From positions 186,001 through 250,000 of the IMG/VR virus record IMGVR_UViG_3300029983_000007: a stretch of 64,000 nt of DNA. One strand, 5' to 3'. The notes under the pieces are model-generated. The model was not told where the DNA came from. It saw nothing but the letters and a program-made list of their open reading frames with translations, and made no database searches. The position numbers were made by a program, and so were the translations under genes. This document shows, in pieces, positions 497 to 31,693 of the stretch. How positions within the stretch are numbered: position 1 is the stretch's first letter; each line of letters begins with the position of its first letter.

Positions 497-1400
497 TCAA
501 TCAATTCTTCCATTATTTAATTTTTCTAATTTTCTTTTTCTATATCCTTGATGATCACTAAAATATTCAGAAAATAGATTGTTTTTTCTATCTGTTTCAA
601 GCCAAAATGCATACTTATCATCATCAGTATAATTTATTGATATTATAACTTCATCTGATTTGCTATCATTGTACATAGTTTTAGTAGCAGATTTTGTGTG
701 ATTAACAGTGTATATGTTATTTTCTTTGAATATTAATTTTTCATCAGATTTTCTATATACATCTTTTGTACAATAAACTTTATCTCCTGCGTTTAGTATT
801 TTTACTGACATTCTATAAATAATTTTTCTAATTTCATTTTTCTATATTCTTTTATGCTCATAAAATATTCATAATAATTCCATCCATATGCATTTTTTAG
901 ATTAAGAGTATAAAAAAACCCATTACTTTCAATTGAAACTAAACTTTCTATACCTTTCTGCTTATACACAAAATGAACAATGTATACATTGTTCATTTTC
1001 ATGACTAATGTATTATCAAAATCATAAAAATCATTTATGCAATAAACTTTATCTCCTTGCTTTGGTATTAACTTCATTGTTTCAATATATTTAATAATTT
1101 TCTTTTTCTTTTTTTACTAATCCATTTATTTCTATTAAAATCAAATACATTTTTTATAATATTGTCACTTGGATTATTTGTGACAGTTTTGCATTCTTTT
1201 AAATCAATCCAACAATGTGATATTCCATCTTCTGAAACATAACCATAAAAACCAGGTAGATAACAACGAGTATCATGATCTGGTATATCATATTCAGTAA
1301 TCAATTTAAATTCTTGAACCTTACCAATAGGTTCAACTGTTGAATTGAATGTAAAGTGAATAATATTACAATCTTTTATCCATTCTTCTATTTCTGTCAT
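497..1400 (-). CDS. three small overlapping ORFans with C-terminal RKxKL-type tail (497-811, 802-1077, 1074-1400)
   Basis: Overlapping stop/start junctions; tails GYRKRKLEKL, EYRKMKLEKL, KKRKRKLLNI; the first two start with GDKVYC like the 5.5-8.8 kb family. Confidence 0.75.
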
Positions 1401-1688: not shown

Positions 1689-1853
1689 ATGAAGAAAATT
1701 AAAACTAAAGTAGCAATATCAATCGCAATAGATAAAGGAATGAATGAATATCTATCAGAAAACTTTGAAAATAAGTCAAAATATATTGAGCATTTGATAT
1801 ATAAAGATTTAGTTGAAAATAATATAATAGAAGAAAATAAATATAAAATGTAA
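1689..1853 (+). CDS. ribbon-helix-helix DNA-binding protein
   Basis: 54 aa MKKIKTKVAISIAIDKGMNEYLSENFENKSKYIEHLIYKDL...; its TAA overlaps the ATG of the endonuclease (TAATG). Confidence 0.65.
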   Translation: MKKIKTKVAISIAIDKGMNEYLSENFENKSKYIEHLIYKDLVENNIIEENKYKM

Positions 1854-3151
1854 TGGGTAAAAAATCAAAAAATGATGTTTTTATTAAAAAGGCAATAGAG
1901 GTACATGGTAATAAATATGACTATAGTTTAGTAGAATATAAACATAATCAAACAAATGTTGAAATTGTGTGTAATGATTGCGGATATAAGTTTCTAAGGA
2001 CTCCACATTATCATCTAAAAAGAAATATTAACAATGGTTGTAAAAATTGTTATTCATTAGCAAGAATATTAACTACTGATATCTTTATTGAAAAAGCAAT
2101 AGAGGTACATGGGAATAAATATGATTATTCTTTAGTTAAATATGAAAAATCGAAGACTAAAATTAAAATTATTTGTCCAATTCACGGAGAGTTTGAACAA
2201 ATACCGAATTCTCATTTATCTGGACATGGGTGCGACAAATGTGGAAGTTTTTCGACAACATATAATTTTATAATAACAGCAAAAGAAATTCATTGTGGTA
2301 AGTATGATTATTCTTTAGTTAATTATATAGATAATAAAACTAAAGTAAAAATTATTTGTCCAACTCATGGTATATTTGAACAAACTCCAGGTGGACATTT
2401 ATTTGGTAGAGGATGTGAAAAATGTGCATTTGATGGTAGAAGAATATTATTAGAAGATTTTATAAAAAGATCAAAAAAAATACATAATGATAAATACGAT
2501 TATTCTTTAGTTGAATATTGTTATTCAACGGAAAAAGTAAAAATTATTTGTCCAACTCATGGTATATTTGAACAAACTCCAAGTGGACATTTAGTAGGAA
2601 AAGGATGTTCAAAATGTAAATTTGATAAACATAGATTATCTACTGATGAATTTATAAAAAGATCAAAAAAAATACATGAAGATAAATATGATTATTCTTT
2701 AATTGATTATATAGATGTTCATAATAAAGTAAAAATTGTTTGTCCAACACATGGTATATTTGAACAAAAGGCAAATTCTCATTTACATAATCATGGATGT
2801 CCGTATTGTAATGAAAGCTTTGGAGAGAAAAAAATAAATAGTTTTTTAAAAAATAAAAAAATATCATACATCAGAGAATTCTCATTCGATGATTGTGTAG
2901 GTAAAAATAATGTTAAATTAAGATTTGATTTTTATCTTATTAAATATAATATTTGTATTGAATTTGATGGTAAACAACATTTTATTGCGCCTGAACAATG
3001 GGGAGGAGATGAATATTTATTACATTCTAAAAAATTAGATAAAATAAAAAATGAATATTGTAAAAATAACAATATTCATTTATTAAGGATAAAATATACA
3101 AAAATTAATTATATTGATATAATATTATCTAGACTTTTAAAACTTTTATAG
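1853..3151 (+). CDS. homing-type endonuclease with about six Zn-binding repeats and a C-terminal Vsr/PD-(D/E)xK-like domain
   Basis: Repeats HGNKYDYSLV-Y...KVKIICPTHGIFEQTP..HL.G.GC.KC; C-terminal RFDFYL..YNICIEFDGKQHF...DKIKNEYC. Confidence 0.8.
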   Translation: MGKKSKNDVFIKKAIEVHGNKYDYSLVEYKHNQTNVEIVCNDCGYKFLRTPHYHLKRNINNGCKNCYSLARILTTDIFIEKAIEVHGNKYDYSLVKYEKSKTKIKIICPIHGEFEQIPNSHLSGHGCDKCGSFSTTYNFIITAKEIHCGKYDYSLVNYIDNKTKVKIICPTHGIFEQTPGGHLFGRGCEKCAFDGRRILLEDFIKRSKKIHNDKYDYSLVEYCYSTEKVKIICPTHGIFEQTPSGHLVGKGCSKCKFDKHRLSTDEFIKRSKKIHEDKYDYSLIDYIDVHNKVKIVCPTHGIFEQKANSHLHNHGCPYCNESFGEKKINSFLKNKKISYIREFSFDDCVGKNNVKLRFDFYLIKYNICIEFDGKQHFIAPEQWGGDEYLLHSKKLDKIKNEYCKNNNIHLLRIKYTKINYIDIILSRLLKLL

Positions 3152-4763
3152 AATTAATAAAGTGATTAGGTAATATATTAGAATTATATTTCAATAAATC
3201 AGAAAAATTTGAATCTAATATGAAAGTTTGACAATAATCAGTTTCACTGCGAATTCCGCGGCCAACTTCTTGAATTGTGTTAACACAGGCATTCCAGGCA
3301 TACCATTCAGGCTTAATTTTTTGTCTAGCTTTAATTTTTTTAGAACCAAGATTTGCGAAACTAATTTTTAGCACTATTTGAAAACGAGCTAACTCATCGT
3401 CTAATGAAATTCCTTCCATCATTGATGGACTGACTAAAACTGTTGCAGTTGTGCTTGTTAAATGTTTTTCAAGTATTTCATTTCTATCTTCAGTTGTATG
3501 AAATAATAGTCTTTCGTCCATAATGGTTTCTTTTAACCATTCTGTTATTTCATAATTTGATGTGTGAATTATACCTTTTTTATCTTTATATTTTGCTAAT
3601 ATTTTTTTTATCCATGGTACTTGATTTTTGAATGTCTCTTCTTTACTATAAAAAGACATCTTACCAAGCTTCATATAAAATATTGGATGATTCTTCAATT
3701 CAAACGGAGATTCAACTTCATAATAGCTTGTTAAATCTTCATCCAGTCCATTAATGAAACCAAACATCTTAGGATCCAATATTGTTGCAGACATGAAAAT
3801 TATATGATCATATTTTGACCAAACATATTCATTAAGGTACTCATATACTAATATATGTTCAGTTACCAACTCTATCCCACTATAATTCTTTTCAGTTTTA
3901 GATTTATTGATATCAAGAACTACATTATCAGGATCATTTTTATATGACTCAAATAAATGTTTAAACGCCAACAATTTACTATCAATATTTTGTAAATATT
4001 TAGATAATTCAACTTTCTGTTTTTGTTTTGATGAACCAGCAATATCTGACTCAAATTGTGTTCTTTTTTTCTCTAACATTGGAATTAACTTTCTTTCTAA
4101 AAATTCTAAATATTTGTCTAAAAATTTAATTTTTGATATATATTTACTATCAATTTCATCAATTTCTTTTAAACCAAATCCGCATTTTTTTAATGTTTTT
4201 GAACTTAATTTTGATGATAAGTAGGATGAGAATGTTTCTTCGAAGGATTGACATTCATCAATTATAAGTACATTACCATCTCTTCGTTTTAGTGTTTCTG
4301 TTTGAAATAATGATAATGTGTCAAATAGATGAAAATTTGTTAAGCCAATATCTCCAGATATCCATGAATTTTTTGCAATATCATATGGACATGCATCACA
4401 ATGTTTTTTCATTATTGTACATAATTCTTTAGCTGTACCACAATCGCAATCAAAATCTTTACAATAATAGTTAGATTTGCCCTTGTAATTGTTAATAAAC
4501 GGAAAATCTTTTATGTACTGATCTTGAAGAATCTTAGAACCTGTCAAAACGTCGAATTTTGCATCAGTATTCACAAATCCCCTATACCAATTTGCAAACA
4601 TCATAACAAGAAACGATTTTCCTGTTCCAGTAGGTAAGTTGCTCAATATGAATCTTTTGCCATTAGTTATACTGTCTTTCATGAAGTTTAATGCCTCAAC
4701 TTGATACGTTTTTGGTTCATATTTCAGAGGGAAAAAAACTTTTTTATCGTCTACTTTAATCAT
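3129..4763 (-). CDS. DinG/Rad3-like SF2 DNA helicase
   Basis: Walker A LPTGTGKS, Walker B IIDECQ, SAT, Cys cluster C-x4-C..C..C...CPY, C-terminal QEVGRGIRSETD...ILDS. Confidence 0.85.
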   Translation of the reverse strand: MIKVDDKKVFFPLKYEPKTYQVEALNFMKDSITNGKRFILSNLPTGTGKSFLVMMFANWYRGFVNTDAKFDVLTGSKILQDQYIKDFPFINNYKGKSNYYCKDFDCDCGTAKELCTIMKKHCDACPYDIAKNSWISGDIGLTNFHLFDTLSLFQTETLKRRDGNVLIIDECQSFEETFSSYLSSKLSSKTLKKCGFGLKEIDEIDSKYISKIKFLDKYLEFLERKLIPMLEKKRTQFESDIAGSSKQKQKVELSKYLQNIDSKLLAFKHLFESYKNDPDNVVLDINKSKTEKNYSGIELVTEHILVYEYLNEYVWSKYDHIIFMSATILDPKMFGFINGLDEDLTSYYEVESPFELKNHPIFYMKLGKMSFYSKEETFKNQVPWIKKILAKYKDKKGIIHTSNYEITEWLKETIMDERLLFHTTEDRNEILEKHLTSTTATVLVSPSMMEGISLDDELARFQIVLKISFANLGSKKIKARQKIKPEWYAWNACVNTIQEVGRGIRSETDYCQTFILDSNFSDLLKYNSNILPNHFINSIKVLKV

Positions 4764-4968
4764 TTAAAGATATTTTTATTTAGTATAGGTGATTTCATGA
4801 TAATTGTTTTTGAAACTTTATAATAATTTGTATTTATAATAGCAATGAAAGAACAAAAAAAGCTTATTGATATAAAGTCGAAAAAGAAGTTGATTTCAGT
4901 AACTGAAAAAACATATGTTGGTTTTGATGTTATAGAATTTAAAAGTGGTAAATATTATAAATTGAAAT

Positions 4969-5452
4969 ATGAATGATAATAGATATTATTGTAAAAAAAA
5001 TTATTATAATAACTTCACAAAAGGATGTTATTATGATATTTGGATAGATCATAACAAGGATTCAAGTTATCTAATAAATTGGATAAATAATAATGTTTAT
5101 AATGTAAACACCATCTATGTTATATATGGATCTGAAATGGATAAAAATTTTAATAGCTATTTTATATTAGCTACTATTCATGATAGAAAAATAAAATTAA
5201 AAATATTAAATGAAGACTAAAAAATATTATTGTAAAAAATCATACGATAGCATTACTATAGGTAATTATTATGATTGTGGAACATCAACTAATGATTTAA
5301 TTTATGAAATTTCTGGAAAAAACAAAAAAGGTTTTGACTTTAATATGATATATGACAATAAATCTGATATTTATAAATATTTTAATGATTATTTAATATT
5401 AGCTATTATTCACGACAGAAAAATAAAACTAGAAAAAATTAGGTTATCTTAA
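4969..5452 (+). CDS. two paralogous small proteins with RKxKL-type tail (4969-5220, 5210-5452)
   Basis: Shared YYCKK...G.YYD...Y.ILA.IHDRKIKL. Confidence 0.75.
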
Positions 5453-5494
5453 TTTTTTTCATTATCTTAGTATTACAAAATATTAAATTTAAAA

Positions 5495-8400
5495 ATGGAT
5501 CAAAATATTAAAATAGGTGACAAATTTTTATGTAAAATGAATTATTGTTATATAATATTACAAAAATTTCATGAAGGTGTAGAATATGAAGTATATGATA
5601 TAAAAAAAATAGACAATGGCTGCGGTTTTTATTATTATTCCTATTCAATGATAGATAATGTTGACTTTAAGTTGTTATATGTGATTGAGTATGAATTAAA
5701 TAATATATTTTACTCTGGTAAAGAAATGAGAAAAATTAAATTAGAAAAATTGAATGAAAAATCATAATATTAAAATTGGTGATAAGTTATTATGTAAAGA
5801 TGATTGTTGGATTCCTAATATATGCTATCATAAAGGTAGAGAATATGAAGTATTTGATTTAAATAATTATTCGTACGTAATAATAGATAGAATTAACAAT
5901 GAGAGATTATTTATTGATGAATCAGAATTAAATTTAGTTTTTTATACTAATCAAGAAATGAGAAAAATTAAATTAGAAAAATTAAATGAAAAAATATAAT
6001 CTTAAAATAGGTGACATATTGTTATGTAAAAAAGATTATATTTATAGTAAAATCTCTTTTAGTATAAATAAAAAATATGAAATAATTCAAATTGTTTATA
6101 ACTCGCTTGAAAATAACAATAATTCGGTTTACTATTATGTATATGACGATAATAATAGTAGCATAGAAATTAGAAATGATGAAGATATGAATAGATATTT
6201 TTACACTAACCAAGAAGTCAGAAATATGAAATTAAAAAAAATTTATGAAGAATCAGAATCTTAATATTGGTGATAAATTATTATGTAAAAATTATTTAAA
6301 AACAGAATATTCTAGTTTAATAGAAGGTGATTATTATTTATTAGTTGATTTTGAGATATTTAATCATGAAGAATATTGTGATGTTAATTATACATTTTAT
6401 GATGAATATAATTATGATGATTATGTATATTATATAGATGATAATAATCATCACTCGTTTTCAATATTAGATGAAAAAGATTTATATAAGTATTTTTATA
6501 AAAAAAATGAGATTAGAAATATGAAATTAGAGAAATTAAAAAATGTTTAAGCAGAATCTTAAAATTGGTGATAAGTTGTTATGTAAGATAGATTATTGGA
6601 CAACAAAAATTTATTTTTTTGAAGGTAGAGAATATAATATATGTGACATAGAAATTGATTATGCAGATGAGAATGATTATGCATATTTTATAATGGATGA
6701 GAATAAAAACCGTGTGTTATTTATGATATTAGATGATTTAGATTCTTTTTTTTATACTAAGAAAGAAGTTAGAAATATCAAAATAAAAAAATTGAAAAAT
6801 GCATAATATTAAATTTAAAATAGGAGAAAGAATATTATGTAAATGCATTTTGCATCAAAACTTCGAATATTTTATGTTAAATAAATATTACACAATTTAT
6901 TCAATTGAAGTGTCAACCATAGGTAATTCATATTATCATATGACATTATAAAATAGCGATTTGCAGTCTATTTGTTCAGATGAATCTGTTTATAATTATT
7001 TTTATACTAACCAAGAAGTCAGGAATATGAAATTGAAAAAATTAAATGAAGAATCAAAATCTTAATAAAGGAGATAAAATATTATGTAAGAATGATATAC
7101 ATAATTCAAGAATTAATTTTACAAAAGGAATAGAATATTATATTGTAGCTATAGAACATAAAAATGATAATTATGATGATGATGGTAGTAATTATTACTA
7201 TTATATATCTGATGATAACTCTCAAATAATAGTTAGTGAAAATGAAAGATTATTTTATAATTATTTTTATACTAACCAAGAAGTCAGGAATATGAAATTA
7301 AAAAAAATAAATGATGATAAATAATTTTAAAGTTGGTGATAAGTTATTATGTAAAAAAGATTATATTACAAAATATTCAAGGTATAAAAAAAACAAATAT
7401 TATTATATTGAAGATATTGATGATCCTGTTTATGATTATGAAGAATATTCATATTATATAAATGATGATAATAATAATAATATTTATTTTTGGAAAGAAT
7501 ATGATTTATATGAATATTTTTATACTGCACAAGATGTACGAAAGCTTAAATTGAAAAATCTTTATGAAGAATCTGAATCTTAAAGTTGGTGACAAGTTAT
7601 TATGTAAAACTAACCTTTGTTCTTTGCTAGTTAATTACTTTAATAAGGATAAATATTATATTGTTTGGGATATTAAAAATTTTAAAGATTATTCTCAGAA
7701 TTGGACTTGGACTTGGTATTATATAATTGATGAAAGAGATTGTCCTTATTCTTTTAGTAAAATGGATGATGATTTATATGATATTTTTTATACTAAAAGT
7801 GAAATTAGAAAAATGAAATTGGAAAAATTGAAAAATGAAGAATATTAAAATAGGTGATAGATTATTATGTAAAAAAAGTCTATTTAACTCATCAATGACA
7901 TATTTTTATGCGAGAGAATATTACACTATTAATGAAATTCAATCAGAGAGTGATGGAGAATATTCATATTATATAATTGATAATAATGGCTATACTATGC
8001 CTTTTTCTTTTAATAATAACACTTTATATGCATATTTTTACACTAAACAAGAAATGAGACATATGAAATTAAAAAAAATTTATGAAGAAGCAGAATCTTA
8101 AAATAGGTGATAGATTATTATGTAAAGAAAGTTTTTTTGATTCAGATGATCCATATTTTCATGTAGATGATTATTGTATTATTTATTATATTCAAAAGTA
8201 TGTTACTAATGAATATTATTATTATATTTCAGATGAAAATAATAAACGATATCCTTTTAGATTTAGTCCTGATTTATTATTAACGTATTTTTATACTAAA
8301 CAAGAAATTAGAAATATGAAATTAAAAAAATTAGAAAAATATGAATAATTTTAATGACTATGATAACATATTATGTAAAAAAGATTTAATTGCTAATGGT

Positions 8401-8836
8401 CAGATATGTTTTATAAAAGATGAGTATTACATTTATCGTGAAAATTTAGGTAATGTTATTGATTTGTTTGGATGCTGTATTTATGGTGAAACTAGTGATA
8501 GATACCCATATTATTTAACTAAAAAAGATTTACTGGGTCATTTTTATACTAAAAATGAAATTAGAAAAATTAAATTGAATAAAATTTATGAAGAAGCAGA
8601 ATCTTAACACAGAAGATATATTATTGTGTAAAAAAGACTATTTAATATATTCTGTTGTTGTGTTTCATAAAAATAAATATTATTATAATAGATTTAATAA
8701 ATCTCATGTTTGTTGTACTATATGTGATGATGATTCATTTGAACATTTGCTTAGTTATGACGAGGTATCTGAGCATTTTTACACTAAACAAGAAGTTAGG
8801 AAAATTAAATTGAAAAAATTGAATGAATGTCAGTAA
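5495..8836 (+). repeat. tandem array of 13 paralogous ~81-101 aa genes (12 intact, 1 broken)
   Basis: Starts at 5495, 5754, 5986, 6245, 6543, 6799, 7046, 7311, 7564, 7835, 8082, 8341, 8588; N-terminal (K/N)(I/V)GD(K/R)(L/I)LCK is conserved (degenerate in the last two) and so is C-terminal FY(T/S/K)xxE/DxRxxKLxK[LI]; middles are divergent; successive genes overlap. Confidence 0.9.
6799..7065 (+). pseudogene. array member with an in-frame TAA at 6949-6951
   Basis: MHNIKFKIGERILCK...YYHMTL*NSDLQSICSDESVYNYFYTNQEVRNMKLKKLNEESKS*; both family ends are in one frame. Confidence 0.85.
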
Positions 8837-8957
8837 AGTTTATTTTTATTAATAACTATTAAAAAAATATAACACAAAAAACATTTTTATTTTAACTAAG
8901 TATATATTATATGAATAATAATTTCAATTTAGTTGTAAATAAAAATAATAAAAAATA

Positions 8958-9125
8958 ATGGAATCTGAAAAAGAACCGCTCACAGTATCTGAACAAAATC
9001 ACAGAATTATTTCATTACTGGAAAGTATTAAAGATCAACTCATCATTCTGACTGATGTAGAAAGAAATAAAGATACAAAGAATAGTGTGTTGGAATATAT
9101 TAGAAATAGAAAACAACAATACTAA
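8958..9125 (+). CDS. small hypothetical protein (55 aa)
   Basis: MESEKEPLTVSEQNHRIISLLESIKDQ...; A-rich upstream region, followed by a terminator. Confidence 0.55.
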   Translation: MESEKEPLTVSEQNHRIISLLESIKDQLIILTDVERNKDTKNSVLEYIRNRKQQY

Positions 9126-9156
9126 AAAAGAGAAGGTTAAAGCCTTCTCTTTTTTT
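9124..9156. terminator. intrinsic (probably bidirectional) terminator
   Basis: AAAAAAGAGAAGG-ttaaag-CCTTCTCTTTTTT hairpin with T tract. Confidence 0.8.
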
Positions 9157-9165
9157 GTTGTTTAA

Positions 9166-9197
9166 TTTGGTAGTTTAAAATATTTAGATTACTTTTG
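9166..9197 (+). promoter_or_regulatory. Bacteroidota sigma-A-type promoter for the cas7-cas5-cas6 operon
   Basis: TTTG (9166-9169), 20 nt, TACTTTTG (9190-9197); matches the TTTG-N19-21-TAnnTTTG consensus. Confidence 0.8.
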
Positions 9198-9237
9198 TTG
9201 TTGATAAAAACAATTATAAAAACATTAAAAAAATTAT

Positions 9238-10323
9238 ATGAAAAAAGTAAGAAGCATTTTATTTAAAATGGAATTAAAAGGCAACGGAGTTGTTAATTTT
9301 GATAGTAATGATCAAAAATATCTTTGGAATGAAAATACAAAAGGTACTGGTCAAGAAAGAGTTAATCACAATAATGTCAGCTTTGCTAAAAAACGTTGGT
9401 ATAAAAATGATGACGGTACAATTGATAAAAAATTGATTGTTTCAAGTAACTGTCTTAGGTATTCAATATTTTCTGATGATACTTTATTTCAATCACCAAA
9501 TATAATTAATAATAGTTTTTTACTAAATTCAATGATTGCCACTCCAGGTTTAATTTGTCGTGGATATATGTTTGCAGAAAAAGATCCATCAAAATCATAT
9601 AAACGATCTAGTGTATTGAATATTACAGATGCTGAACAAATAAATAATTCGATATCTACATTAGAAACTTTTAGTCGTAGTGGAGAAAAAATTGTTGATG
9701 AAAACAAATCTGACACAAGTTTCTTCAAAAAAGAAACAGTAGGTAATATTGTATATGAAGCGATAGGTAGTATTGATATGATGCAAATTCAATTTGTTAG
9801 TTGTGATCAACTATTTGATAGGATGGCATTAAATCCAGATATATTTCCAGATTATAAGAAATTTCTTTCTACTAAATTACCAAATTTCAATTCTGAACTT
9901 AGTTATTATCAAATTAAAGGTAGTGCTATTGAACTTCCTGAATATGGTTTTATGTTATCAAATGAAAATGTGATATTTTTAGTAAAGGATTTATTCACTA
10001 AAATGTTAAACTTAAAAATTCGAAAAGCATCTGCATTTGCTGAAGTTTCTTCTATCAAATATAAAATTGTTAATGATCCATTTGAAGATAAATTTAGTGA
10101 TGAAGACGGCTGGTTGGAATTGAATAAAAACGTTATTGAAACATTGAATTTTGATAATGAGGACTTCTATGAGAAATATGATTTTGATGCTGCTAAATCT
10201 TTAAGATTAGAATTAGAAGATGCTGCAAAAGCCAGAAAAGATGCTAATAAAGATGCTGCAAATTTAAAAAAAGAAGAAGCAAAATCTAAAAAAGAAAAAA
10301 AAGTAGAAGAAACTGAAGAATAA
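9238..10323 (+). CDS. cas7: CRISPR-associated Cas7-like backbone protein (divergent)
   Basis: N-terminal strand-G..N, VSSNCLRY (ISxxxlR-like), RGY...KRSS.L.ITDA, then ETFSR...DTSFF..E..G..Y...G.ID, the Cas7 RAMP pattern; first gene of an operon with cas6 beside an array; charged helical C-tail. Confidence 0.75.
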   Translation: MKKVRSILFKMELKGNGVVNFDSNDQKYLWNENTKGTGQERVNHNNVSFAKKRWYKNDDGTIDKKLIVSSNCLRYSIFSDDTLFQSPNIINNSFLLNSMIATPGLICRGYMFAEKDPSKSYKRSSVLNITDAEQINNSISTLETFSRSGEKIVDENKSDTSFFKKETVGNIVYEAIGSIDMMQIQFVSCDQLFDRMALNPDIFPDYKKFLSTKLPNFNSELSYYQIKGSAIELPEYGFMLSNENVIFLVKDLFTKMLNLKIRKASAFAEVSSIKYKIVNDPFEDKFSDEDGWLELNKNVIETLNFDNEDFYEKYDFDAAKSLRLELEDAAKARKDANKDAANLKKEEAKSKKEKKVEETEE

Positions 10324-10334
10324 TAAAAAATAGC

Positions 10335-11210
10335 ATGAAATATTTAAAGTTAAGTTTCAGAAATGCTGGCTTCTATACTGTTAATAAAAATACTAAAGAC
10401 TTTATGTTTGATATAAATGGTCAGCACAAAAGAAAAGATGTATTATATGGTAAACAGCAAAAAGTTAGTATTTCTGTTAATCAGATAAGTAATATGTTAC
10501 ATGTTTTAATGGGCGAAAGACCAAGTGCAACATATCGTGATACTTTAATAAATCCGATAAATTCTATTTTTCAAACTGCTAATAAATCATACATTAAGAT
10601 TTATACCTCATTTTTTATAAATAAAAATAAAAATGTGAAATATTATCCTTCTGAAAGTGTTACTATTAGAAAATCAGTTTGGAATAGTTTTAATCCTGCA
10701 CCAGATTTAGTTTATTGGAAAAGAGTTGAGAATTTTTTAACTAATGATATAGATAATTCATTATATCTTGAATTTGTAAAAATATTAAATTCTATATTAG
10801 AATATGATGTATTAAAAAAAACATTTTTAGATGTTATTGATGAATTGATAAAAAATCATAAAAATCATAGTTTAATTAACACTTTTAAATTAAAACTTAA
10901 AGAATCAATGAAAGTTCCAATGATTAAAATATTGGATGGTGAATATGATGGCACTATGAATAAAAATAGTAGAACAATGTTGACTACTAATTTTGGTGTT
11001 GATAAGATTACTAGATTGAGTGGTTCTATTATAATACCAGTTGAAGAATATGATATTGAAAAAATTAGGAATTCAAAAGGTTCTGTTACTTTATTAGACG
11101 GTGGAGTAGTGTGGATTGAAGATTTGATAAATGATTATGAATTTGGAGTTAGAGAACTTGAAGAATATTTACCTATTAATAAATTAGAAGAATATGAGAA
11201 TAATATTTGA
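10335..11210 (+). CDS. cas5: Cas5-like protein with large central helical insertion
   Basis: N-terminal MKYLKLSFRNAGFY...QISNMLHVLMGERP resembles the Cas5 first strand and 'sal.Gll.ailG' helix; C-terminal LSGSIIIP...VTLLDGG.V.I resembles the Cas5 RRM end; lies between cas7 and cas6. Confidence 0.55.
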   Translation: MKYLKLSFRNAGFYTVNKNTKDFMFDINGQHKRKDVLYGKQQKVSISVNQISNMLHVLMGERPSATYRDTLINPINSIFQTANKSYIKIYTSFFINKNKNVKYYPSESVTIRKSVWNSFNPAPDLVYWKRVENFLTNDIDNSLYLEFVKILNSILEYDVLKKTFLDVIDELIKNHKNHSLINTFKLKLKESMKVPMIKILDGEYDGTMNKNSRTMLTTNFGVDKITRLSGSIIIPVEEYDIEKIRNSKGSVTLLDGGVVWIEDLINDYEFGVRELEEYLPINKLEEYENNI

Positions 11211-11907
11211 ATTTACAGAAAATACATCATTAGTACCAATTAATAATCAGTCATATATGAATTATTATATTCAAAAATGTCTTGGCGACAATAATAAATA
11301 TCATGATTCTAAGAATGATTATTCTATTTCTTCATTATATGGAGGTAAGTTAACAGATGATGAATTACATTTATCTTTCAAAAATGGAGGCATTATTGTT
11401 GTAACTTCAAAAAATGAAGAATTCTTGAATACTTTGATATGTGGTGTGATGTCTAATAAAGAATTAAAATGGGGAATGAAATTTGATAAAATTAATTTCA
11501 TTTCTGAAATTTTTAGAAATGGCTGGAATCATTTTGCTACATTATCTCCTTTTATTATTAAAAAATATATTGATAAAAAGAATTATACCTTTTCAACTTT
11601 GAATGATTCTGATTTTGTAGATACTGTAAAAAAACATATTATAAAAAAATTGAGTAAAATTTATAATGGTATAAATTTAACAGATTTTGATGTTAAAATA
11701 ATCAATCATCCTTCTCATAAAGTAAAAAAAATAATGGTGAAGAATGTTAAAAATGAAGCTAATCAATGTCAAGTCAGTATATTCTGTTCATCAGATGTAG
11801 CAGAAAAAATTTACAATTTAGGTATAGGTCAATCAACTGGTTCAGGATTTGGAACAATTTATAAAACAGAAAATAGAGATAAATATAATTTAGAATTGAA
11901 AAAATGA
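11194..11907 (+). CDS. cas6: CRISPR-associated endoribonuclease Cas6
   Basis: YHD..N.YSIS.L.GG, TLSPFII, C-terminal Gly-rich loop GIGQSTGSGFGTI. Confidence 0.95.
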   Translation: MRIIFEFTENTSLVPINNQSYMNYYIQKCLGDNNKYHDSKNDYSISSLYGGKLTDDELHLSFKNGGIIVVTSKNEEFLNTLICGVMSNKELKWGMKFDKINFISEIFRNGWNHFATLSPFIIKKYIDKKNYTFSTLNDSDFVDTVKKHIIKKLSKIYNGINLTDFDVKIINHPSHKVKKIMVKNVKNEANQCQVSIFCSSDVAEKIYNLGIGQSTGSGFGTIYKTENRDKYNLELKK

Positions 11908-11999
11908 TTAATTTTAATCTAAATGATATTGTTACAAGTGATTTTTTAAATTATAAATCACTTGTAATGTTATGTATATCTGTCAATTATGAATAATGA
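11908..11999 (+). promoter_or_regulatory. CRISPR leader with a 13-bp inverted repeat
   Basis: AT-rich non-coding stretch next to the first perfect repeat; TTACAAGTGATTT (11932-11944) / AAATCACTTGTAA (11955-11967). Confidence 0.65.
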
Positions 12000-13222
12000 A
12001 CTGATACTTATATAATTCCGCAAGGGAATCACAACAATGTGGAATGTAACTGGAATTAATGTTTTACTGATACTTATATAATTCCGCAAGGGAATCACAA
12101 CGAATATGCAGAATATTCAAAAAAGAGAATAACTGATACTTATATAATTCCGCAAGGGAATCACAACACAACAGATAATGGAAATAAATTACAAGTTACT
12201 GATACTTATATAATTCCGCAAGGGAATCACAACTCTAGCAGTGCAATAGAGCCAGCCCAATCAACTGATACTTATATAATTCCGCAAGGGAATCACAACT
12301 ATAAATAACAAAGAACTAATGAAAAACTCACTGATACTTATATAATTCCGCAAGGGAATCACAACTCAGCCTGAATTTTACCTTTACCCATCATTACTGA
12401 TACTTATATAATTCCGCAAGGGAATCACAACTAAAAATAACCATCTAATAATTGAGACATAACTGATACTTATATAATTCCGCAAGGGAATCACAACTGA
12501 TGTGATGATATACAGAAAAAAAAATAACTGATACTTATATAATTCCGCAAGGGAATCACAACATCATTCTATTGATTGTTATATTTCTTCTAACTGATAC
12601 TTATATAATTCCGCAAGGGAATCACAACATCTTTTCTATATAATATATTTTCATATTTACTGATACTTATATAATTCCGCAAGGGAATCACAACATCAAA
12701 AAATGTAATTCTATATTTATAATTACTGATACTTATATAATTCCGCAAGGGAATCACAACATATATTTTCTTTAAACTGCTCAATGATGAACTGATACTT
12801 ATATAATTCCGCAAGGGAATCACAACATTGCGTACGACTCATATAATTCAACACAAACTGATACTTATATAATTCCGCAAGGGAATCACAACAGCCCATA
12901 TGTACACCCTATTTAGTGGTACACTGATACTTATATAATTCCGCAAGGGAATCACAACTGCGCTTGAGTTGTTGAATTTGCTGCAAAAACTGATACTTAT
13001 ATAATTCCGCAAGGGAATCACAACTTTAATGCTTTTGCAAATTTTGGCATAATAACTGATACTTATATAATTCCGCAAGGGAATCACAACATTGCAGTTT
13101 GATACATTTCAAAATAAGAAACTGATACTTATATAATTCCTTGATGGAATCACAATATTGAAAAAATAGAAAAGTTGATACAATAAACTAATAATTATAT
13201 CATTCCGTAAAGGAATTTAAAA
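12000..13222 (+). CRISPR. CRISPR array: 17 identical plus 2 degenerate 36-nt repeats, 18 spacers
   Basis: Repeat ACTGATACTTATATAATTCCGCAAGGGAATCACAAC at 12000, 12066, 12132, 12198, 12264, 12330, 12396, 12462, 12527, 12593, 12659, 12725, 12791, 12857, 12923, 12989, 13055; degenerate copies at 13121 and 13187; spacers all different, 30 nt (one 29 nt); internal hairpin ATTCC-GCAAG-GGAAT. Confidence 0.99.
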
Positions 13223-13234
13223 TATTAAAAATTA

Positions 13235-13266
13235 TTTGTATAATCAAATAAATAATAGTATATTTG
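13235..13266 (+). promoter_or_regulatory. Bacteroidota-type promoter for cas3
   Basis: TTTG (13235-13238), 20 nt, TATATTTG (13259-13266). Confidence 0.8.
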
Positions 13267-13290
13267 CATGTTATAAAAAATTATTAAAAT

Positions 13291-15564
13291 ATGATAGAAA
13301 CATTAGTGTCTAATAGTAATGGAGTATCTTTAAAAACTCACTCGTTAGCTGTTCAAAAAATAGCAGTTATAATGGCTGAAAGATTAGGATTACCAATTGA
13401 TATACAAAATGCTATATCAAAAGCTGCTTTGTTACATGACATTGGAAAATCTTATATTCCTTTTCAAAATTATGTATCAAAAAAAGTTGTATCTGAAGAG
13501 TTTACTAATAATAAAATATTTCATCATGAAATTTCATGGGCTATACTTAGATATCTTATGAATATTGATAAAGATTATAATTATAGTATTTTATATTCTA
13601 TATATTGGCATCATTCCAGAGATATGAGTAATAAAAATAAAGAATATGCATCATCGATATTAGAAAAATTAACAGATGATGATAAACAAAGAGTATTAAC
13701 TGTGTATAATGAATTAACTGGTGAAAATAAAGTTTTATCAGATCTTGATGTTAATATCATGAATGATAAAATTCCTGATTATTATATAAATAAAGATGAT
13801 AAAATTTGTTCATTGAATATTATTGTTATGTCTTGTGTAGTTTCTTCAGATAGATATGTATCATCAATAAATATAGACCAGAATAAAATTTTAATTGATG
13901 ATAATTATTGTAATGAAATTGTTGATTCTATAGATTATTCTCCTACAAAAAATTATATAACACCAAAAAATTATGATATTGATCGTTTTAATTATCAATT
14001 ATCTTGTGCTGGTGATATAAATAGTAATCAAACTTCTGAATTGAAAGCACCTGCTGGTTATGGTAAAACTATTAATGGCTTACTTGCTTGGATTAAATCT
14101 GGGAATAGAAAATTAATTTGGGTTTGTCCAAGAAATACAATAGCGGAAACTCTATTTGATGGTGTTAAAAATGAACTTAATGCATTAAGTATCAATAATA
14201 TTAGTGTTGAATTGTTTCTTACTGGAGAAAGACGTGATATTTATAATGAAAACAATAATATAGATTTCACATCGGATATTATAATCACTAATATTGATAA
14301 TTTTTTGACTCCTACCATTAATAATTTTGTTAGAGATAGAATGTACTCATTATTATCAAGTTATGTTATTTTTGATGAATTTCATGAATTAGTTGCGTCT
14401 GAGCCGTACTTTGCTTGTTTTGTTAATATCATGAATGTTAGACATAGATATACAAATAGTAAAACATTACTGATGAGTGCGACCCCTACAATGATGACAA
14501 ATTTATGGGATAACTCAATTAAAGGAACTGCTATTTTACCAAATGAAACTAATCATTATAATGCTGCTCATTCTAAGAAATTTAGAATAAATTTCTTAGA
14601 TGATATAACTTTAGTAAATCCTCAACTAAATAGTTTATTTATAACAAATTCAATAAAATCTTCTCAAACAAAAACTATTGATGACGATTATTCAGTTATA
14701 GCGCATAGTAAATATATGATTGATGACAGAAAGTGTATAATTGATAGTATATTTGATATGTATGGTAAAAATAAGAAGATTCAAAATAAATTAGATGTTA
14801 TATCTGCGCCATTGATTCAAGCTGCTATGGATTTATCTTTTGGTATTATGACTGAAATTCCTAAATCTCCAGAAGATACATTTCAAAGATTGGGTAGACT
14901 TAATAGATGGGGAGAATATGATGTAGTTGATTATAATATTTTAGTTAATATTAATGATAAAAAAATAAATTTAAGTGAATTAGCTTCAATTAATCTTACT
15001 TATGACATAAAATTAAATAAATTGTGGATTGATTATTTAAAAAATAATATTATTGATAAATATGAATATACATTAGATGAATTGTACATTAAATACAATG
15101 TTTTTAATTCAATGTATAAAAAAGAAATAAATGAATATATTAATGATAGATACATTAAAAGTAGAGAATCATTATCTAAATTATTTCCAAGAAAATATAT
15201 AAATAAAGATACAAAAAAAATAGTATCATCAGGTTCTAAACTTAGGGACAATGGATCAAATAATATTTATTGTATATATAAAATATATAATACTGATGAG
15301 TATACAGATGTATTTAGTATTGATTCTAATGGTTCAGATATGGATAAACATGAAGATAATACTACTCAAACTAATCAGATTCGTTCTATTAAGAAATTGT
15401 TAACTGATAGTAGATTTGAATATAATAAACATAGATTATTAACAGGTAACAAATTTACTAGTAATAAATTATTTGAATCTGCAAAAAATCCTAAGACTCC
15501 ATATATTTGTTACCATAAAGAATATCATCCAAAATTAGGGCTTATATCAATTTATTTATTATAA
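13291..15564 (+). CDS. cas3: CRISPR-associated HD nuclease/SF2 helicase Cas3
   Basis: HD domain: LKTH, ALLHDIGK, HHEIS, WHHS, SSDR; helicase: APAGYGKT, DEFH, SAT, QAAMDLS, QRLGRLNRWG. Confidence 0.95.
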   Translation: MIETLVSNSNGVSLKTHSLAVQKIAVIMAERLGLPIDIQNAISKAALLHDIGKSYIPFQNYVSKKVVSEEFTNNKIFHHEISWAILRYLMNIDKDYNYSILYSIYWHHSRDMSNKNKEYASSILEKLTDDDKQRVLTVYNELTGENKVLSDLDVNIMNDKIPDYYINKDDKICSLNIIVMSCVVSSDRYVSSINIDQNKILIDDNYCNEIVDSIDYSPTKNYITPKNYDIDRFNYQLSCAGDINSNQTSELKAPAGYGKTINGLLAWIKSGNRKLIWVCPRNTIAETLFDGVKNELNALSINNISVELFLTGERRDIYNENNNIDFTSDIIITNIDNFLTPTINNFVRDRMYSLLSSYVIFDEFHELVASEPYFACFVNIMNVRHRYTNSKTLLMSATPTMMTNLWDNSIKGTAILPNETNHYNAAHSKKFRINFLDDITLVNPQLNSLFITNSIKSSQTKTIDDDYSVIAHSKYMIDDRKCIIDSIFDMYGKNKKIQNKLDVISAPLIQAAMDLSFGIMTEIPKSPEDTFQRLGRLNRWGEYDVVDYNILVNINDKKINLSELASINLTYDIKLNKLWIDYLKNNIIDKYEYTLDELYIKYNVFNSMYKKEINEYINDRYIKSRESLSKLFPRKYINKDTKKIVSSGSKLRDNGSNNIYCIYKIYNTDEYTDVFSIDSNGSDMDKHEDNTTQTNQIRSIKKLLTDSRFEYNKHRLLTGNKFTSNKLFESAKNPKTPYICYHKEYHPKLGLISIYLL

Positions 15565-25362: not shown

Positions 25363-26356
25363 TTTATAATAGACAATAATTCAGAATAATCTTTGTTTAT
25401 AACAAATATAAAATTAAAGCCATTATTTATAGTGGCTTCTTTTTTAGCTTCATTTTTTTCTTTTTCAAGTTCGTAAGTATAACTACTTTTAATTTCAACT
25501 ATCAAATTATAATTAGGTAAATAAAAATCAGGATAATATTTTTTATTTTTATTATCAAAAATATAATCAATATATTTAGCATTTTCTATTTTATAATCAT
25601 CACTAAAATTAATAAGAAAGTCTAACTCATAAGTTCCTCTATATAAATATTGCTTATATTCTTTTAATTGAAATGCTGATTTTTGAGACTTTTTAAAAAT
25701 TTCATAATTTTGTATAGGATATTCTACGCCATATCGTTCTAAATTTATATTTTTAATTTTTTCTTTAATTTCATAATTTTGTATAGGATATTCTACGCCA
25801 TAATCAGCAAGACTTTTTTTATTTTCTTATTTTTTATTTCTTGATTTTGTGAATTATGTTCAACCCCATATCGTTCTAAATTTGTTTTCTTACTTTTTTC
25901 ATTAATTTCATAATTTTGTAAAGCACACACCGTGCCATATTTTTTAAAATTTGTTTTTTTAATTTTTTTATAAAATTCAATATTTTGTGTTGGATATTCT
26001 ACACCATATTTTTCTAAATTTGTTTTTTTGCATTTTTCATTATATTCTTTTGTTTTTGAATAATTATAGACACCATATTTATTTAACATTATTATTTTAA
26101 CTTTTTCTTGACCACACGCACTTGAGCATGAATAGAAATTGCATTTTATGAAACTTTTATAATAAAATCTATATTCCATTATTTTTTCATTACCACATAC
26201 ATCACATTTAACAACAATTTTTTGACTACTACCTTTAGATAAATCTTCTGTATTTATTTCAATGATATCTTTTAATTTGCACTTATATCCTTTTAATATT
26301 AACTCATAAATATTTTTTTTATTGACTTTAATTATAATTTTATTAGTTAATATCAT
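25359..26356 (-). pseudogene. repeat-containing PD-(D/E)xK endonuclease split by a -1 frameshift
   Basis: 5' ORF has CKC, CDVC, CSSAC and KYGVEYPTQN repeats; the -1 frame past the A7 run (about 25814-25820) continues ...DYGVEYPIQN..RYGVEYPIQN...YYPDFYLPNYNLIVEIKSSYT...* (TAG at 25359-25361). Confidence 0.8.
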
Positions 26357-31513: not shown

Positions 31514-31584
31514 TGCTCTATGTTGTAATGATAGCAATCAGGAATTTGGATCCTGCAGATTAGGTTTGAGTCCTAATAGAGCAA
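31514..31584 (+). tRNA. trnQ: tRNA-Gln(UUG), atypical
   Basis: Acceptor TGCTCTA/TAGAGCA, anticodon arm CAGGA-ATTTGGA-TCCTG, T arm TTAGG-TTTGAGT-CCTAA; A19/U56 compensatory pair; no encoded CCA. Confidence 0.8.
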
Positions 31585-31598
31585 CAACACAATGTCAC

Positions 31599-31683
31599 TG
31601 CCTTGTGATGGAATTGGTTAAACATGTCAGTCTTTGAAACTGATGCTCATATGAGCTTGTGGGTTCGAATCCCACTAAGGCGA
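31599..31683 (+). tRNA. class II-like (long variable arm) tRNA with Gln anticodon UUG
   Basis: Acceptor TGCCTTG/TAAGGCG, D loop AATTGGTTAAA, anticodon arm TCAGT-CTTTGAA-ACTGA, variable hairpin GCTC-ATAT-GAGC, T arm GTGGG-TTCGAAT-CCCAC. Confidence 0.85.
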
Positions 31684-31693
31684 CAAATTATAT

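What the first reader, a model, noticed from the sequence alone, without database searches (positions are those of the whole stretch)
5495..8836. Thirteen-copy gene accordion with conserved junctions and hypervariable cores
Seen: each unit has a GDxLLCK start, a divergent Tyr/Asp-rich middle and an FYTxxExRxxKLxKL end. The DNA across junctions is near-identical (TTTTATACTAAnnAAGAAnTnAGAAAnATGAAATTnAAAAAAnTnnATGAAGAAnCAGAATCTTAA), with the same 20-nt two-frame overlap (YEESES* / MKNQNL) reused several times. Inference: the junction blocks act as recombination handles for expansion, contraction and shuffling of a diversified host-interaction repertoire, placed directly upstream of the CRISPR island.
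Basis: partly seen in the sequence, partly recalled or inferred. Interest (0 to 1): 0.68.

Follow-up and report, generated by a model that had tools for sequence, protein, structure and literature searches.

The report
Megaphage tandem family of small barrel proteins
A giant peat-bog phage carries a row of 13 to 19 overlapping genes for small barrel-shaped proteins of unknown function, with conserved ends and fast-changing middles, and the row gains, loses and reshuffles copies over evolutionary time rather than acting as a rapid accordion.

Summary
Window 5495-8836 carries 13 head-to-tail paralogous genes of 81-101 aa. One of them (6799-7065) has an in-frame TAA. Every junction overlaps by 8, 14 or 20 nt. 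Two distant paralogs lie upstream, and about 15 more are scattered over the 330-kb record, which is a fragment of a roughly 0.7-Mb megaphage from peat.

AlphaFold models (pLDDT 86-87) show an SH3-like barrel, a C-terminal helix and a variable hairpin loop that is acidic and rich in Tyr. No Pfam or PHROG family matches, yet 2,619 metagenomic cluster representatives do.

Four related lineages carry 13, 15, 16 and 17 or 19 units at the same locus, always next to a CRISPR-Cas operon, which is of two different types.

- **Cores:** they track orthologs across lineages and evolve fast (dN/dS about 0.6, against 0.1 for the neighbouring helicase).
- **Ends:** heads and tails cluster by genome, mostly with neighbouring units, which points to local duplication or gene conversion.
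- **Junction DNA:** it is about 80% identical, not near-identical. Protein conservation and AT-biased codon use explain most of that.
- **Stability:** the array is invariant in every sample that holds this phage.

My verdict is a birth-and-death multigene family of probable binding proteins, not a poxvirus-style accordion. Its function is unknown.

The parts
4845..4976 (+). 43-aa leader ORF at the head of the operon, conserved in all four lineages
   Evidence: Amino-acid identity is 86% between W and T and 79% between W and G. No Pfam hit.
4969..5220 (+). Distant paralog Wu1, of the YYCKK ... IHDRKIKL type
   Evidence: Aligns with the family. Profile E 7e-14. Forms a separate clade with Wu2.
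5210..5452 (+). Distant paralog Wu2
5495..5767 (+). Unit W01 (90 aa). Modelled as an SH3-like barrel plus a C-terminal helix
   Evidence: pLDDT 87.2.
5754..5999 (+). Unit W02 (81 aa). Overlaps W01 by 14 nt
5986..6264 (+). Unit W03 (92 aa). Its core ortholog is T_07
6245..6550 (+). Unit W04 (101 aa). It has the longest acidic, Tyr-rich insert; core charge is -14
   Evidence: In the model the insert (residues 40-58) has pLDDT of about 60.
6543..6806 (+). Unit W05 (87 aa). Closest cross-lineage pair is G_02, at 66%
6799..7065 (+). Unit W06, with an in-frame TAA at 6949-6951 (probable pseudogene). Its ortholog R05 is intact
   Evidence: The same stop is present in L019, L020 and L035.
7046..7324 (+). 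Unit W07 (92 aa)
   Evidence: Shares a 46-nt exact tail match with W06.
7311..7583 (+). Unit W08 (90 aa)
7564..7848 (+). Unit W09 (94 aa)
7835..8101 (+). Unit W10 (88 aa)
8082..8348 (+). Unit W11 (88 aa)
8341..8607 (+). Unit W12 (88 aa). Clear orthologs are R10/R12 and T_16
8588..8836 (+). Unit W13 (82 aa), the last unit. It keeps the conserved tail although no family gene follows it
8958..9125 (+). 55-aa ORF of unknown function between the array and the terminator
9124..9155 (.). Two-way terminator-like hairpin. It is the only one in 4600-9400 and closes the array operon ahead of the cas genes
   Evidence: 2 found, against 0.1 expected.
497..1077 (-). Two further, more distant family members (497-811 and 802-1077)
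9238..15564 (+). Context: the CRISPR-Cas island. Cas7fv-like 9238-10323, putative Cas5 10335-11210, Cas6 11194-11907, repeat array about 12000-13171, HD-helicase Cas3 13291-15564

Best explanation
This is a tandem multigene family in an AT-rich megaphage of about 0.7 Mb from peat, whose genes lack Shine-Dalgarno sites.

Each unit encodes a stand-alone protein of about 90 aa with three parts:
- a conserved N-terminal strand (IGDKLLCK) that opens an SH3-like beta-barrel;
- a beta-hairpin whose tip loop varies in length and sequence and is acidic and Tyr-rich;
- a conserved basic C-terminal helix (FYTxxExRKxKLxKL).

Shown here:
- The genes form one tightly packed run with 8-20-nt overlaps and no internal terminator.
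- The [N/Y]-E codons of each tail supply the ATG of the next gene.
- The codons of the tail helix make the A-rich leader that this genome's genes typically have upstream.
- Copy number, content and partly order differ between lineages (13-19 units).
- One unit is a pseudogene.
- Cores follow orthology and diverge fast.
- Heads and tails resemble those of neighbouring units in the same genome.

Inferred:
- The run is one polycistronic, translationally coupled operon.
- The family evolves by birth and death, through tandem duplication and unequal crossing-over plus short gene-conversion tracts. These events use whatever identity the conserved ends, and sometimes the conserved core strands, provide.
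- Selection on the proteins keeps the scaffold and tail and lets the loop change.
- The proteins are a diversified set of binders on one scaffold, made together early in infection to engage varied host or competitor targets, with anti-defence or host take-over as the likeliest role.
- The shared tail is a common functional module for docking, tagging or oligomerisation.

The function is not shown.
For: Anatomy:
- ORFs, overlaps and frame cycling. The same design appears in R, T and G.
- The only terminator lies at 9124-9155.
- The genome lacks Shine-Dalgarno sites: 7 of 209 long ORFs have an SD-like motif. Positions -17 to -9 are 60-69% A, and the array's upstream regions are 62% A.

Fold:
- Two AlphaFold models, pLDDT 87.2 and 85.7.
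- The best solved match both times is the RecD2 SH3 domain (Z 7.3 and 7.4, rmsd 1.9-2.6 over 58-62 residues). Dozens of SH3, Tudor, KOW and FeoA barrels follow at Z 5-7.
- In the ESM Atlas, TM 0.60-0.67 over 80-88 residues to the C-terminal part of Dda/RecD-like phage helicases.
- Length variation maps to the hairpin tip after residue 42, where the W04 model has pLDDT of about 60.

Family:
- No Pfam, PHROG or PDB sequence hit and no match in GenBank phage records.
- 66 hits by word search and 2,619 by the full profile search, nearly all stand-alone proteins of 80-120 aa.
- A run with at least 22 members in another phage contig.

Evolution:
- Unit counts are 13, 15, 16 and 17 or 19.
- The helicase is 77-91% identical between lineages, while the best unit pairs reach 40-66%.
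- dN/dS is 0.58 for cores, 0.23 for heads and 0.08-0.14 for the helicase.
- The nearest neighbour lies in the same genome for 38 of 62 tails and 29 of 62 heads (chance about 15; the highest of 1,000 shuffles gave 27 and 28). For cores the count is 13 of 62.
- 26 of the 38 same-genome tail neighbours lie within two units. Synonymous codon identity in tails is 0.793 within genomes and 0.740 between them.
- G36 and G37 are identical in every unit except one core patch and a 2-unit indel with a mosaic head.

Composition: Tyr is enriched 2.8-fold and the cores are acidic.
Against: - No expression, binding or phenotype data exist. The homodimer prediction gave no verdict.
- The dN/dS values are crude: Nei-Gojobori on short, AT-rich, partly saturated pairs of uncertain orthology.
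- Same-genome clustering of the ends could come from recent local duplication followed by fast core divergence, without gene conversion. It could also come from lineage-specific co-adaptation of the tail to a shared partner.
- The copy-number variants rest on metagenome assemblies (scaffolds L036 and L037; short contigs L028 and L030), where repeats can mis-assemble.
- The junction join seen in L028 was absent from the k=31 contigs of four other runs.
- The fold matches have Z below 8, which the tool itself calls middling.
Confidence: 0.6

Rival explanations
1. A true gene accordion. The junction blocks are kept as DNA-level recombination handles, and copy number and order change quickly in populations under selection.
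For: - Ends cluster by genome.
- The tails of G37_13 and G37_15 share about 62 nt and flank a 2-unit difference between near-clonal scaffolds.
- L028 joins the head of unit 8 to the body of unit 2 exactly at a shared 23-mer.
- L030 lacks unit R08.
Against: - The array is 100% identical, or differs at 1 nt, in all contigs of this phage. The eight R contigs are also identical.
- Contigs from four further runs tile the reference order with no alternative join of good support.
- There are no near-identical copies. The best pair in the window is 55% identical.
- The ends are conserved in singletons and in distant phages.
- The excess of synonymous identity is small.
- L028 and L030 are short, low-coverage MEGAHIT contigs that could be chimeras at repeats.
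Confidence: 0.15
2. The conserved ends are explained by protein function and translation alone. The tail helix and head strand are structural or functional motifs, and the tail codons double as the start region of the next gene. The apparent concerted evolution only reflects recent local duplications whose cores then diverged. Recombination plays no special role beyond ordinary tandem duplication.
For: - The motifs are conserved across the whole family.
- The tail is kept in last units and in singletons.
- The A-rich leader matches the rest of the genome.
- Neighbouring units with similar tails often also have related cores, for example G37_14/15 and G37_16/17.
- Synonymous identity is close to expectation.
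Against: - There are mosaic units whose head and body have different nearest relatives: G37_16 against G37_14 and G36_14.
- The core patch in unit 10 of G36 resembles unit 8.
- Orthologous cores carry lineage-specific tails: W03 and W07 share NQEVRNMKLKK, while their orthologs T_07 and T_08 share MKLKKLNNEKSK.
Confidence: 0.25
3. The units are virion-associated or injected cargo proteins, and the shared C-terminal tail is a packaging or targeting tag.
For: - The tail motif lies within 15 aa of the C-terminus in 30 ORFs of the record, against 2 occurrences elsewhere. Five or six of those ORFs have N-terminal parts that the family profile does not match.
- Other contigs hold proteins that share only the tail.
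Against: - No structural genes are adjacent. The neighbours are a helicase, a DUF723 protein and the cas genes.
- No proteomics is available.
- The known capsid-targeting signal of T4 internal proteins is N-terminal and is cleaved off (from my own knowledge, not tested here).
Confidence: 0.1

Closest known systems
Multigene families of large eukaryotic DNA viruses (ASFV MGF110/360/505; poxvirus host-range gene families)
   Same: These are tandem runs of diverged paralogs in a variable region of a very large virus genome. They show lineage-specific gain and loss, pseudogenes and faster evolution than flanking core genes. All of this matches the birth-and-death pattern seen here.
   Different: The host domain, fold and size differ: here the proteins are 90-aa SH3-like proteins in a phage. 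Here almost every gene overlaps the next, and the ends evolve in concert. The comparison rests on my own knowledge of those families, not on a test.
Poxvirus gene accordion (K3L amplification)
   Same: A tandem array in a large dsDNA virus whose copy number can change by recombination between repeats.
   Different: Accordion copies are recent and near-identical, and copy number is polymorphic within populations. Here copies share 30-55% of residues, and the array is invariant in every sample of this phage.
SH3 domain inserted in SF1B helicases (RecD2, Dda, Pif1, TraI)
   Same: It is the best structural match for two independent unit models (Z 7.3 and 7.4). Atlas matches cover the barrel plus the following helix (TM 0.60-0.67).
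   Different: There is no sequence similarity and there are no helicase motifs. The units are stand-alone proteins. No UvrD_C_2 domain was found in the 330-kb record.
Tudor-like RNA-polymerase-interacting domains (CarD N-terminal domain, PcrA/UvrD C-terminal domain)
   Same: The same small-barrel fold, at Z 5.4-7.0. These are examples of such barrels acting as protein-docking modules.
   Different: The link is by fold only, with no sequence relationship. Binding to RNA polymerase was not tested.
Phage anti-CRISPR and anti-defence gene clusters
   Same: Small, acidic, fast-evolving proteins without annotated domains, arranged in an operon and lying next to defence-related genes.
   Different: Known clusters mix unrelated families rather than holding 13-19 paralogs. 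No inhibitor activity was tested. The putative regulator (an RHH-looking ORF) has no Pfam support.

Membership tests
SH3-like small beta-barrel fold | A five- or six-stranded small barrel that superposes on solved SH3, Tudor or KOW domains | tested here: met
   Two models (pLDDT 87.2 and 85.7). There are 102 and 60 chains with Z of 5 or more, dominated by SH3, Tudor, KOW and FeoA barrels. The top Z values are 7.3 and 7.4 at rmsd 1.9-2.6 over 58-62 residues. Z is below 8, so this supports the fold only.
Pfam SH3, KOW or Tudor families (membership by sequence) | A profile match above the gathering score | tested here: not met
   No such hit for any of the 54 members at E up to 1. No PDB sequence hit at E up to 10.
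SF1B helicase (RecD/Dda) | Helicase motifs, or the AAA_30 and UvrD_C_2 domains | tested here: not met
   The units are 81-101 aa with no helicase domain. PF13538 is absent from the record.
Poxvirus-type gene accordion | Recent, near-identical tandem copies | tested here: not met
   Within the window the best pair shares 55% of residues, and the longest exact DNA match is 46 nt.
Poxvirus-type gene accordion | Copy number polymorphic within a population | tested here: inconclusive
   W is invariant and so is R. G has 17 against 19 units in sister samples. L028 and L030 are variants on short contigs. All of this rests on assemblies; raw reads were not available.
Birth-and-death multigene family | Lineage-specific gains and losses, with some orthologs retained | tested here: met
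   Unit counts are 13, 15, 16 and 17 or 19. Retained ortholog pairs include W06-R05, W12-R12-T16, W05-G02 and W04-G13. Many units have no clear partner.
Birth-and-death multigene family | Pseudogenes within the array | tested here: met
   W06 has an in-frame TAA. A remnant reading ...HDRKIKLE lies upstream of R01.
Concerted evolution by gene conversion or unequal crossing-over | Paralogous segments within a genome are more alike than orthologous segments between genomes | tested here: met
   This holds for tails (38 of 62) and heads (29 of 62), above all 1,000 label shuffles. It does not hold for cores (13 of 62).
Concerted evolution by gene conversion or unequal crossing-over | The excess similarity extends to synonymous sites | tested here: inconclusive
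   In tails, synonymous codon identity is 0.793 within genomes and 0.740 between them. Within W, the ends give 0.79-0.80, the core 0.75 and the expectation is 0.69. The effect is small and no formal test was run.
Anti-CRISPR or anti-defence operon | Demonstrated inhibition of a defence system | not testable with these tools
   This needs experiments.
Anti-CRISPR or anti-defence operon | An associated HTH or RHH regulator (Aca-like) | tested here: inconclusive
   Small ORFs with an RHH-looking pattern lie at window 1689-1853, L011 6164-6319 and L036 3699-3857. None has a Pfam hit at a meaningful score.
Diversity-generating retroelement | A reverse transcriptase with a template and variable repeat pair | tested here: not met
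   No RVT_1 match in the 330-kb record. The record is only about 46% of the genome.

The most novel reading that the evidence does not exclude
The array is a phage-encoded repertoire of binders built on one SH3-like scaffold. The acidic, Tyr-rich hairpin loops have diversified to neutralise many different host defence or rival-phage proteins, some perhaps by mimicking DNA. The shared C-terminal helix is a common module that docks every member, and some unrelated proteins, to one partner or compartment. The conserved position beside a swappable CRISPR-Cas operon would then mark a combined offence and defence island of megaphages.
Probability: 0.2. Interest if true: 0.8.

Novelty: new variant of a known kind. 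Interest (0 to 1): 0.55.

Why it matters
Megaphages carry hundreds of genes of unknown function. This locus is a large family of small proteins with no annotation: 2,619 cluster representatives and about 30 copies in half of one genome. It has a confident fold and a clear split between scaffold and variable loop, and its evolutionary behaviour can be measured.

If the units are binders aimed at host or rival targets, they would form a new class of phage counter-defence or take-over proteins and a natural miniature binder scaffold.

Two further features suggest rules of gene organisation in phages whose hosts do not use Shine-Dalgarno sites, and both can be tested directly. The tail-coding DNA appears to serve three roles: protein helix, start context for the next gene and recombination substrate. 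The same C-terminal tail also recurs on proteins that are otherwise unrelated.

Tried and rejected
- **Family scans.** Pfam, PHROGs and PDB sequence searches of single units and of a 54-member alignment found nothing meaningful.
- **GenBank phages.** Searches by DNA and by protein found no match.
- **Rfam.** No hit on 4500-13500.
- **Promoter scan.** Uninformative in this AT-rich DNA: 58 sites found, 58.5 expected.
- **Foldseek.** Against PDB and BFVD it gave only weak SH3-like rows, with E above 0.01.
- **Homodimer prediction for W01.** No verdict (score 0.41, mark 0.42). This is no evidence either way.
- **Laying public runs on the array.**
  - All four runs were Logan contigs, not raw reads.
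  - The contigs tile the reference order with no differences.
  - The listed joints have sides under 31 letters and probably come from paralogs or other phages.
  - The test therefore cannot rule out rare variants.
- **L029.** It looked like a recombinant between the T and W lineages. It switches abruptly from about 70% to 100% identity in the middle of W03. More than 24 genuine T contigs carry a different unit there, so I treat it as a probable assembly chimera.
- **L028.** It joins the head of unit 8 to the body of unit 2 at a shared 23-mer. It may be a rare duplication or a MEGAHIT chimera. It is not counted as evidence.
- **Whole-unit tree.** It is nearly a star, with only 5 of 27 branches supported. 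Orthology was therefore judged on cores and on reciprocal best hits.
- **DGR.** No reverse transcriptase was found.
- **Literature.** Four searches found no description of such arrays in huge phages.
  - No genetic code other than table 11 was used or needed.
  - Read laying was given 3,501 letters.
Full report
**What is there**

The window is bases 186001-250000 of a 330,208-bp IMG/VR virus record. CheckV rates the record 46% complete. The same proteins occur on a contig of 711,471 bp, so this is a megaphage. Its GC content is 24%. The runs that hold it are peat metagenomes.

Between 5495 and 8836 on the + strand lie 13 head-to-tail ORFs of 81-101 aa. They share three parts:
- an N-terminal M-x3-N-x-K-I-G-D-K-L-L-C-K;
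- a divergent middle;
- a C-terminal F-Y-T-x-x-E-x-R-x-x-K-L-x-K-L.

Unit 6 (6799-7065) carries an in-frame TAA at 6949-6951. The same stop is present in every other contig of this phage.

All 12 junctions overlap: 20 nt at five junctions, 14 nt at four and 8 nt at three. Each overlap is 2 mod 3, so the frame advances by one at every junction. The ATG of each gene is made by the [N/Y]-E codons of the preceding tail.

The run starts earlier than the finding says. A conserved 43-aa ORF (4845-4976) and two distant paralogs (4969-5220 and 5210-5452) precede it. A profile finds 26-30 members in the record, including 497-811 and 802-1077 on the - strand of the window.

The only terminator-like hairpin in 4600-9400 is at 9124-9155. 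It follows a 55-aa ORF and precedes the cas genes.

**Is it more than chance and AT bias?**

Yes. Profile E-values for the units run from 1e-23 to 1e-33. Tyr makes up 16.4% of the cores, against 5.9% in the phage's long ORFs. Asp is enriched 1.6-fold, and core net charge runs from -2 to -14.

The claim that the junction DNA is near-identical is overstated. Head and tail segments are about 80-82% identical, and the barely alignable cores about 67%. The longest exact matches between units are mostly 11-31 nt, with one of 46 nt.

I looked at pairs of units that carry the same amino acid at a position and asked how often they use the same codon. The fractions were 0.80 in heads, 0.75 in cores and 0.79 in tails. 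The genome's codon usage predicts 0.69. Most of the DNA similarity at the junctions therefore follows from conserved residues written in a very biased code.

**The protein**

Two AlphaFold models, W01 with 14 sequences and W04 with 61, have pLDDT 87.2 and 85.7. Both show a small all-beta barrel, then a short helix and a long C-terminal helix.

Exhaustive structure alignment puts the SH3 domain of RecD2 first for both models (Z 7.3 and 7.4, rmsd 1.9-2.6 over 58-62 residues). SH3, CarD and PcrA Tudor-like, EF-P and NusG KOW, FeoA, Pif1 and TraI barrels follow at Z 5-7. Atlas matches to Dda/RecD-like phage helicases cover the barrel plus the helix (TM 0.60-0.67 over 80-88 residues). These Z values support the fold, not a function.

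Length variation is concentrated after residue 42, at the tip of the long hairpin. In W04 this is a 19-residue acidic, Tyr-rich insert with pLDDT of about 60.

No Pfam, PHROG or PDB sequence relative exists, and no GenBank phage record matches. The family is nevertheless large. The word search found 66 hits, and the full profile search found 2,619 cluster representatives at E of 0.001 or better. Almost all are stand-alone proteins of 80-120 aa. Another phage contig holds at least 22 members in a run of 37 small genes.

**Relatives of the locus**

Four lineages share the neighbourhood. In each, a 544-aa SF2 helicase on the - strand (with a DUF723 gene beside it in W, R and G) is followed by the array and then by a cas operon.

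| Lineage | Source | Units | cas operon downstream |
|---|---|---|---|
| W | the window | 13 plus 2 distant paralogs | Cas7fv-like, putative Cas5, Cas6, then Cas3 |
| R | L011-L018 | 15 | same type as W |
| T | L031-L034 | 16 plus 2 distant paralogs | Cas6, a 551-aa protein, Cas7, Cas5d, Cas3 |
| G | L036 and L037 | 17 and 19 (the first unit is of the distant YYCKK type) | as T, plus Cas4 and Cas1 |

The position beside CRISPR-Cas is therefore conserved while the Cas type is not.

Nearly all junctions overlap in every lineage, by 4, 8, 11, 14 or 20 nt.

The helicase is 88%, 91% and 77% identical between W and R, G and T. The best unit pairs across lineages reach only 40-66%. Some orthologs are clear: W06-R05, W12-R12-T16, W05-G02, W04-G13 and W03-T07. 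W and T are roughly collinear for such pairs. W04 and W05 are neighbours in W, but their partners sit at positions 13 and 2 in G. Many units have no clear partner.

Crude Nei-Gojobori estimates give dN/dS of 0.08-0.14 for the helicase. For 12 putative ortholog pairs the pooled values are 0.58 for cores (range 0.29-1.44), 0.23 for heads and 0.52 for tails.

**Do the ends recombine?**

Over 62 units of four lineages I asked whether each segment's nearest neighbour lies in the same genome.

| Segment | Same-genome nearest neighbour | Highest of 1,000 label shuffles |
|---|---|---|
| Tails | 38 of 62 | 27 |
| Heads | 29 of 62 | 28 |
| Cores | 13 of 62 | 32 |

Chance gives about 15. Of the 38 same-genome tail neighbours, 26 lie within two units. 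Tails also share synonymous codons slightly more often within a genome (0.793) than between genomes (0.740).

Lineage-specific tail variants sit on unrelated cores. Examples are KQEERKIKLEKLYEE in R07-R14 and IKLNKLINE in G06-G12. W03, W06 and W07 share NQEVRNMKLKK, while the core orthologs of W03 and W07 (T_07 and T_08) share MKLKKLNNEKSK.

The scaffolds L036 and L037 come from sister samples. Away from the array their flanks are 99.7-100% identical, apart from a difference in repeat number inside the DUF723 gene. Every shared unit has zero differences except in two places:
- a short core patch in unit 10, which in L036 resembles unit 8;
- a 2-unit insertion or deletion bounded by tails that share about 62 nt, together with a unit whose first 30 codons equal those of another unit.

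This fits unequal crossing-over and short conversion tracts. The breakpoints lie both at the ends and inside cores.

**Evidence against a rapidly changing accordion**

- All contigs of the W phage are identical over the array or differ at one base.
- The eight R contigs are identical over 16 kb.
- The k=31 contigs of four further runs tile the reference order with no differences and no well-supported alternative join.
- No two units are recent copies.

The short MEGAHIT contigs L028 and L030, and the T/W hybrid L029, may be rare variants or chimeras at repeats. I do not count them. Raw reads were not available, so rare variants are not excluded.

**Why the ends are conserved**

The head and tail motifs are conserved across the whole family. 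That includes last units, which have no downstream partner, as well as singletons and distant contigs.

The tail motif R-x-x-K-[LIM]-x-x-[LI] lies within 15 residues of the C-terminus in 30 ORFs of the record and occurs only twice elsewhere in 115,000 residues. Five or six of those ORFs have N-terminal parts that the family profile does not match (the same is seen in L041). The tail is therefore a protein module in its own right.

The phage also lacks Shine-Dalgarno sites (7 of 209 long ORFs), and its genes have A-rich leaders (60-69% A at positions -17 to -9). The tail-helix codons provide just such a leader for the next gene (62% A). That the tail DNA also acts as the start region is an inference.

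**Most likely account**

This is a birth-and-death multigene family of small SH3-like proteins. It is probably expressed as one overlapping operon. Selection keeps the scaffold and the tail and lets the hairpin loop change. Recombination among the conserved segments duplicates, deletes and patches units locally.

The function is unknown. The acidic, Tyr-rich variable loop on a fixed scaffold, the fast core evolution, the small size and the position beside defence genes make a set of diversified binders the best guess, probably for anti-defence or host take-over. I put about 0.3 on that functional part and about 0.6 on the account as a whole.

**Comparison with known systems**

In its evolutionary behaviour the array resembles the multigene families of ASFV and poxviruses. 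It fails the defining features of a poxvirus gene accordion, namely recent identical copies and copy-number polymorphism within a population. It shares a fold, but no sequence, with the SH3 domains of SF1B helicases and with Tudor-like docking domains. It is not a DGR target, since no reverse transcriptase was found. Literature searches found no description of such arrays in huge phages.

Only genetic code 11 was used. Read laying received 3,501 letters. The large protein search was run only after the family scans and the word search had left the protein unexplained.

Noticed in passing
G000 90528-91187(-), 182684-182983(-), 184548-184757(-), 276536-276832(-), 327522-327962(-); L041 447-755 and 1255-1497: Proteins whose N-terminal parts do not match the family profile still end in the same basic tail, R-x-x-K-L-x-K-[LI]. 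This suggests a modular C-terminal tag used across the phage's proteome. The motif is C-terminal in 30 ORFs and occurs only twice elsewhere.
   Followed up: partly
window 9238-15564; L031 11734-16330; L036 8597-16276: The cas operon directly downstream of the array differs in type between lineages. W and R have a Cas7fv-like gene, Cas5, Cas6 and Cas3. T and G have Cas6, a 551-aa protein, Cas7, Cas5d and Cas3, with Cas4 and Cas1 as well in G. The locus has swapped its CRISPR-Cas system.
   Followed up: partly
window 31514-31848: Four tRNA-Gln genes stand in a row, three with anticodon TTG and one with CTG. One of them is 86 nt long. None is a suppressor according to ARAGORN.
   Followed up: no
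window 1853-3151 (repeat at 2267-2768); L036 2681-3361 against L037 1599-2867: The DUF723 / treble-clef gene has an internal 192-bp tandem repeat. Its homolog is 226 aa in one G scaffold and 422 aa in the other. This is a second repeat-number difference between those near-clonal scaffolds, or else an assembly collapse.
   Followed up: partly
window 1689-1853; L011 6164-6319; L036 3699-3857: These small ORFs have a strand-helix-helix pattern that looks like a ribbon-helix-helix regulator. In R and G the ORF sits at the head of the array operon. There is no Pfam support.
   Followed up: partly
whole record G000: Genes lack Shine-Dalgarno motifs (7 of 209 long ORFs) and have A-rich leaders. Stop codon use is TAA 153, TGA 47 and TAG 9. 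This pattern is typical of phages of Bacteroidota-like hosts, which is my inference.
   Followed up: partly
L038 3681-4648: In one G-lineage scaffold the Cas7 gene is split into pieces of 147 and 123 aa.
   Followed up: no
L029 (3408 bp): This contig follows the T lineage up to the middle of the W03 ortholog and is then 100% identical to the window. It is probably an assembly chimera between two phages that occur together, or less likely a recombinant between lineages.
   Followed up: yes
L011 about 6560-6634: A remnant of a YYCKK-type unit, reading ...HDRKIKLE, lies upstream of the first R unit. It is a decayed copy.
   Followed up: no
window 25698-26042 and 39214-39397: There are further tandem repeats: period 69 with 5 copies, overlapping the ORF at 25793-26356(-), and period 95 with 1.9 copies in an intergenic AT-rich stretch. 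They were not examined.
   Followed up: no
L031 11667-11734: In the T lineage no terminator-like hairpin separates the array from cas6, and the gap is only 67 nt. In W the hairpin at 9124-9155 does separate them. The array may be co-transcribed with the cas genes in some lineages.
   Followed up: partly
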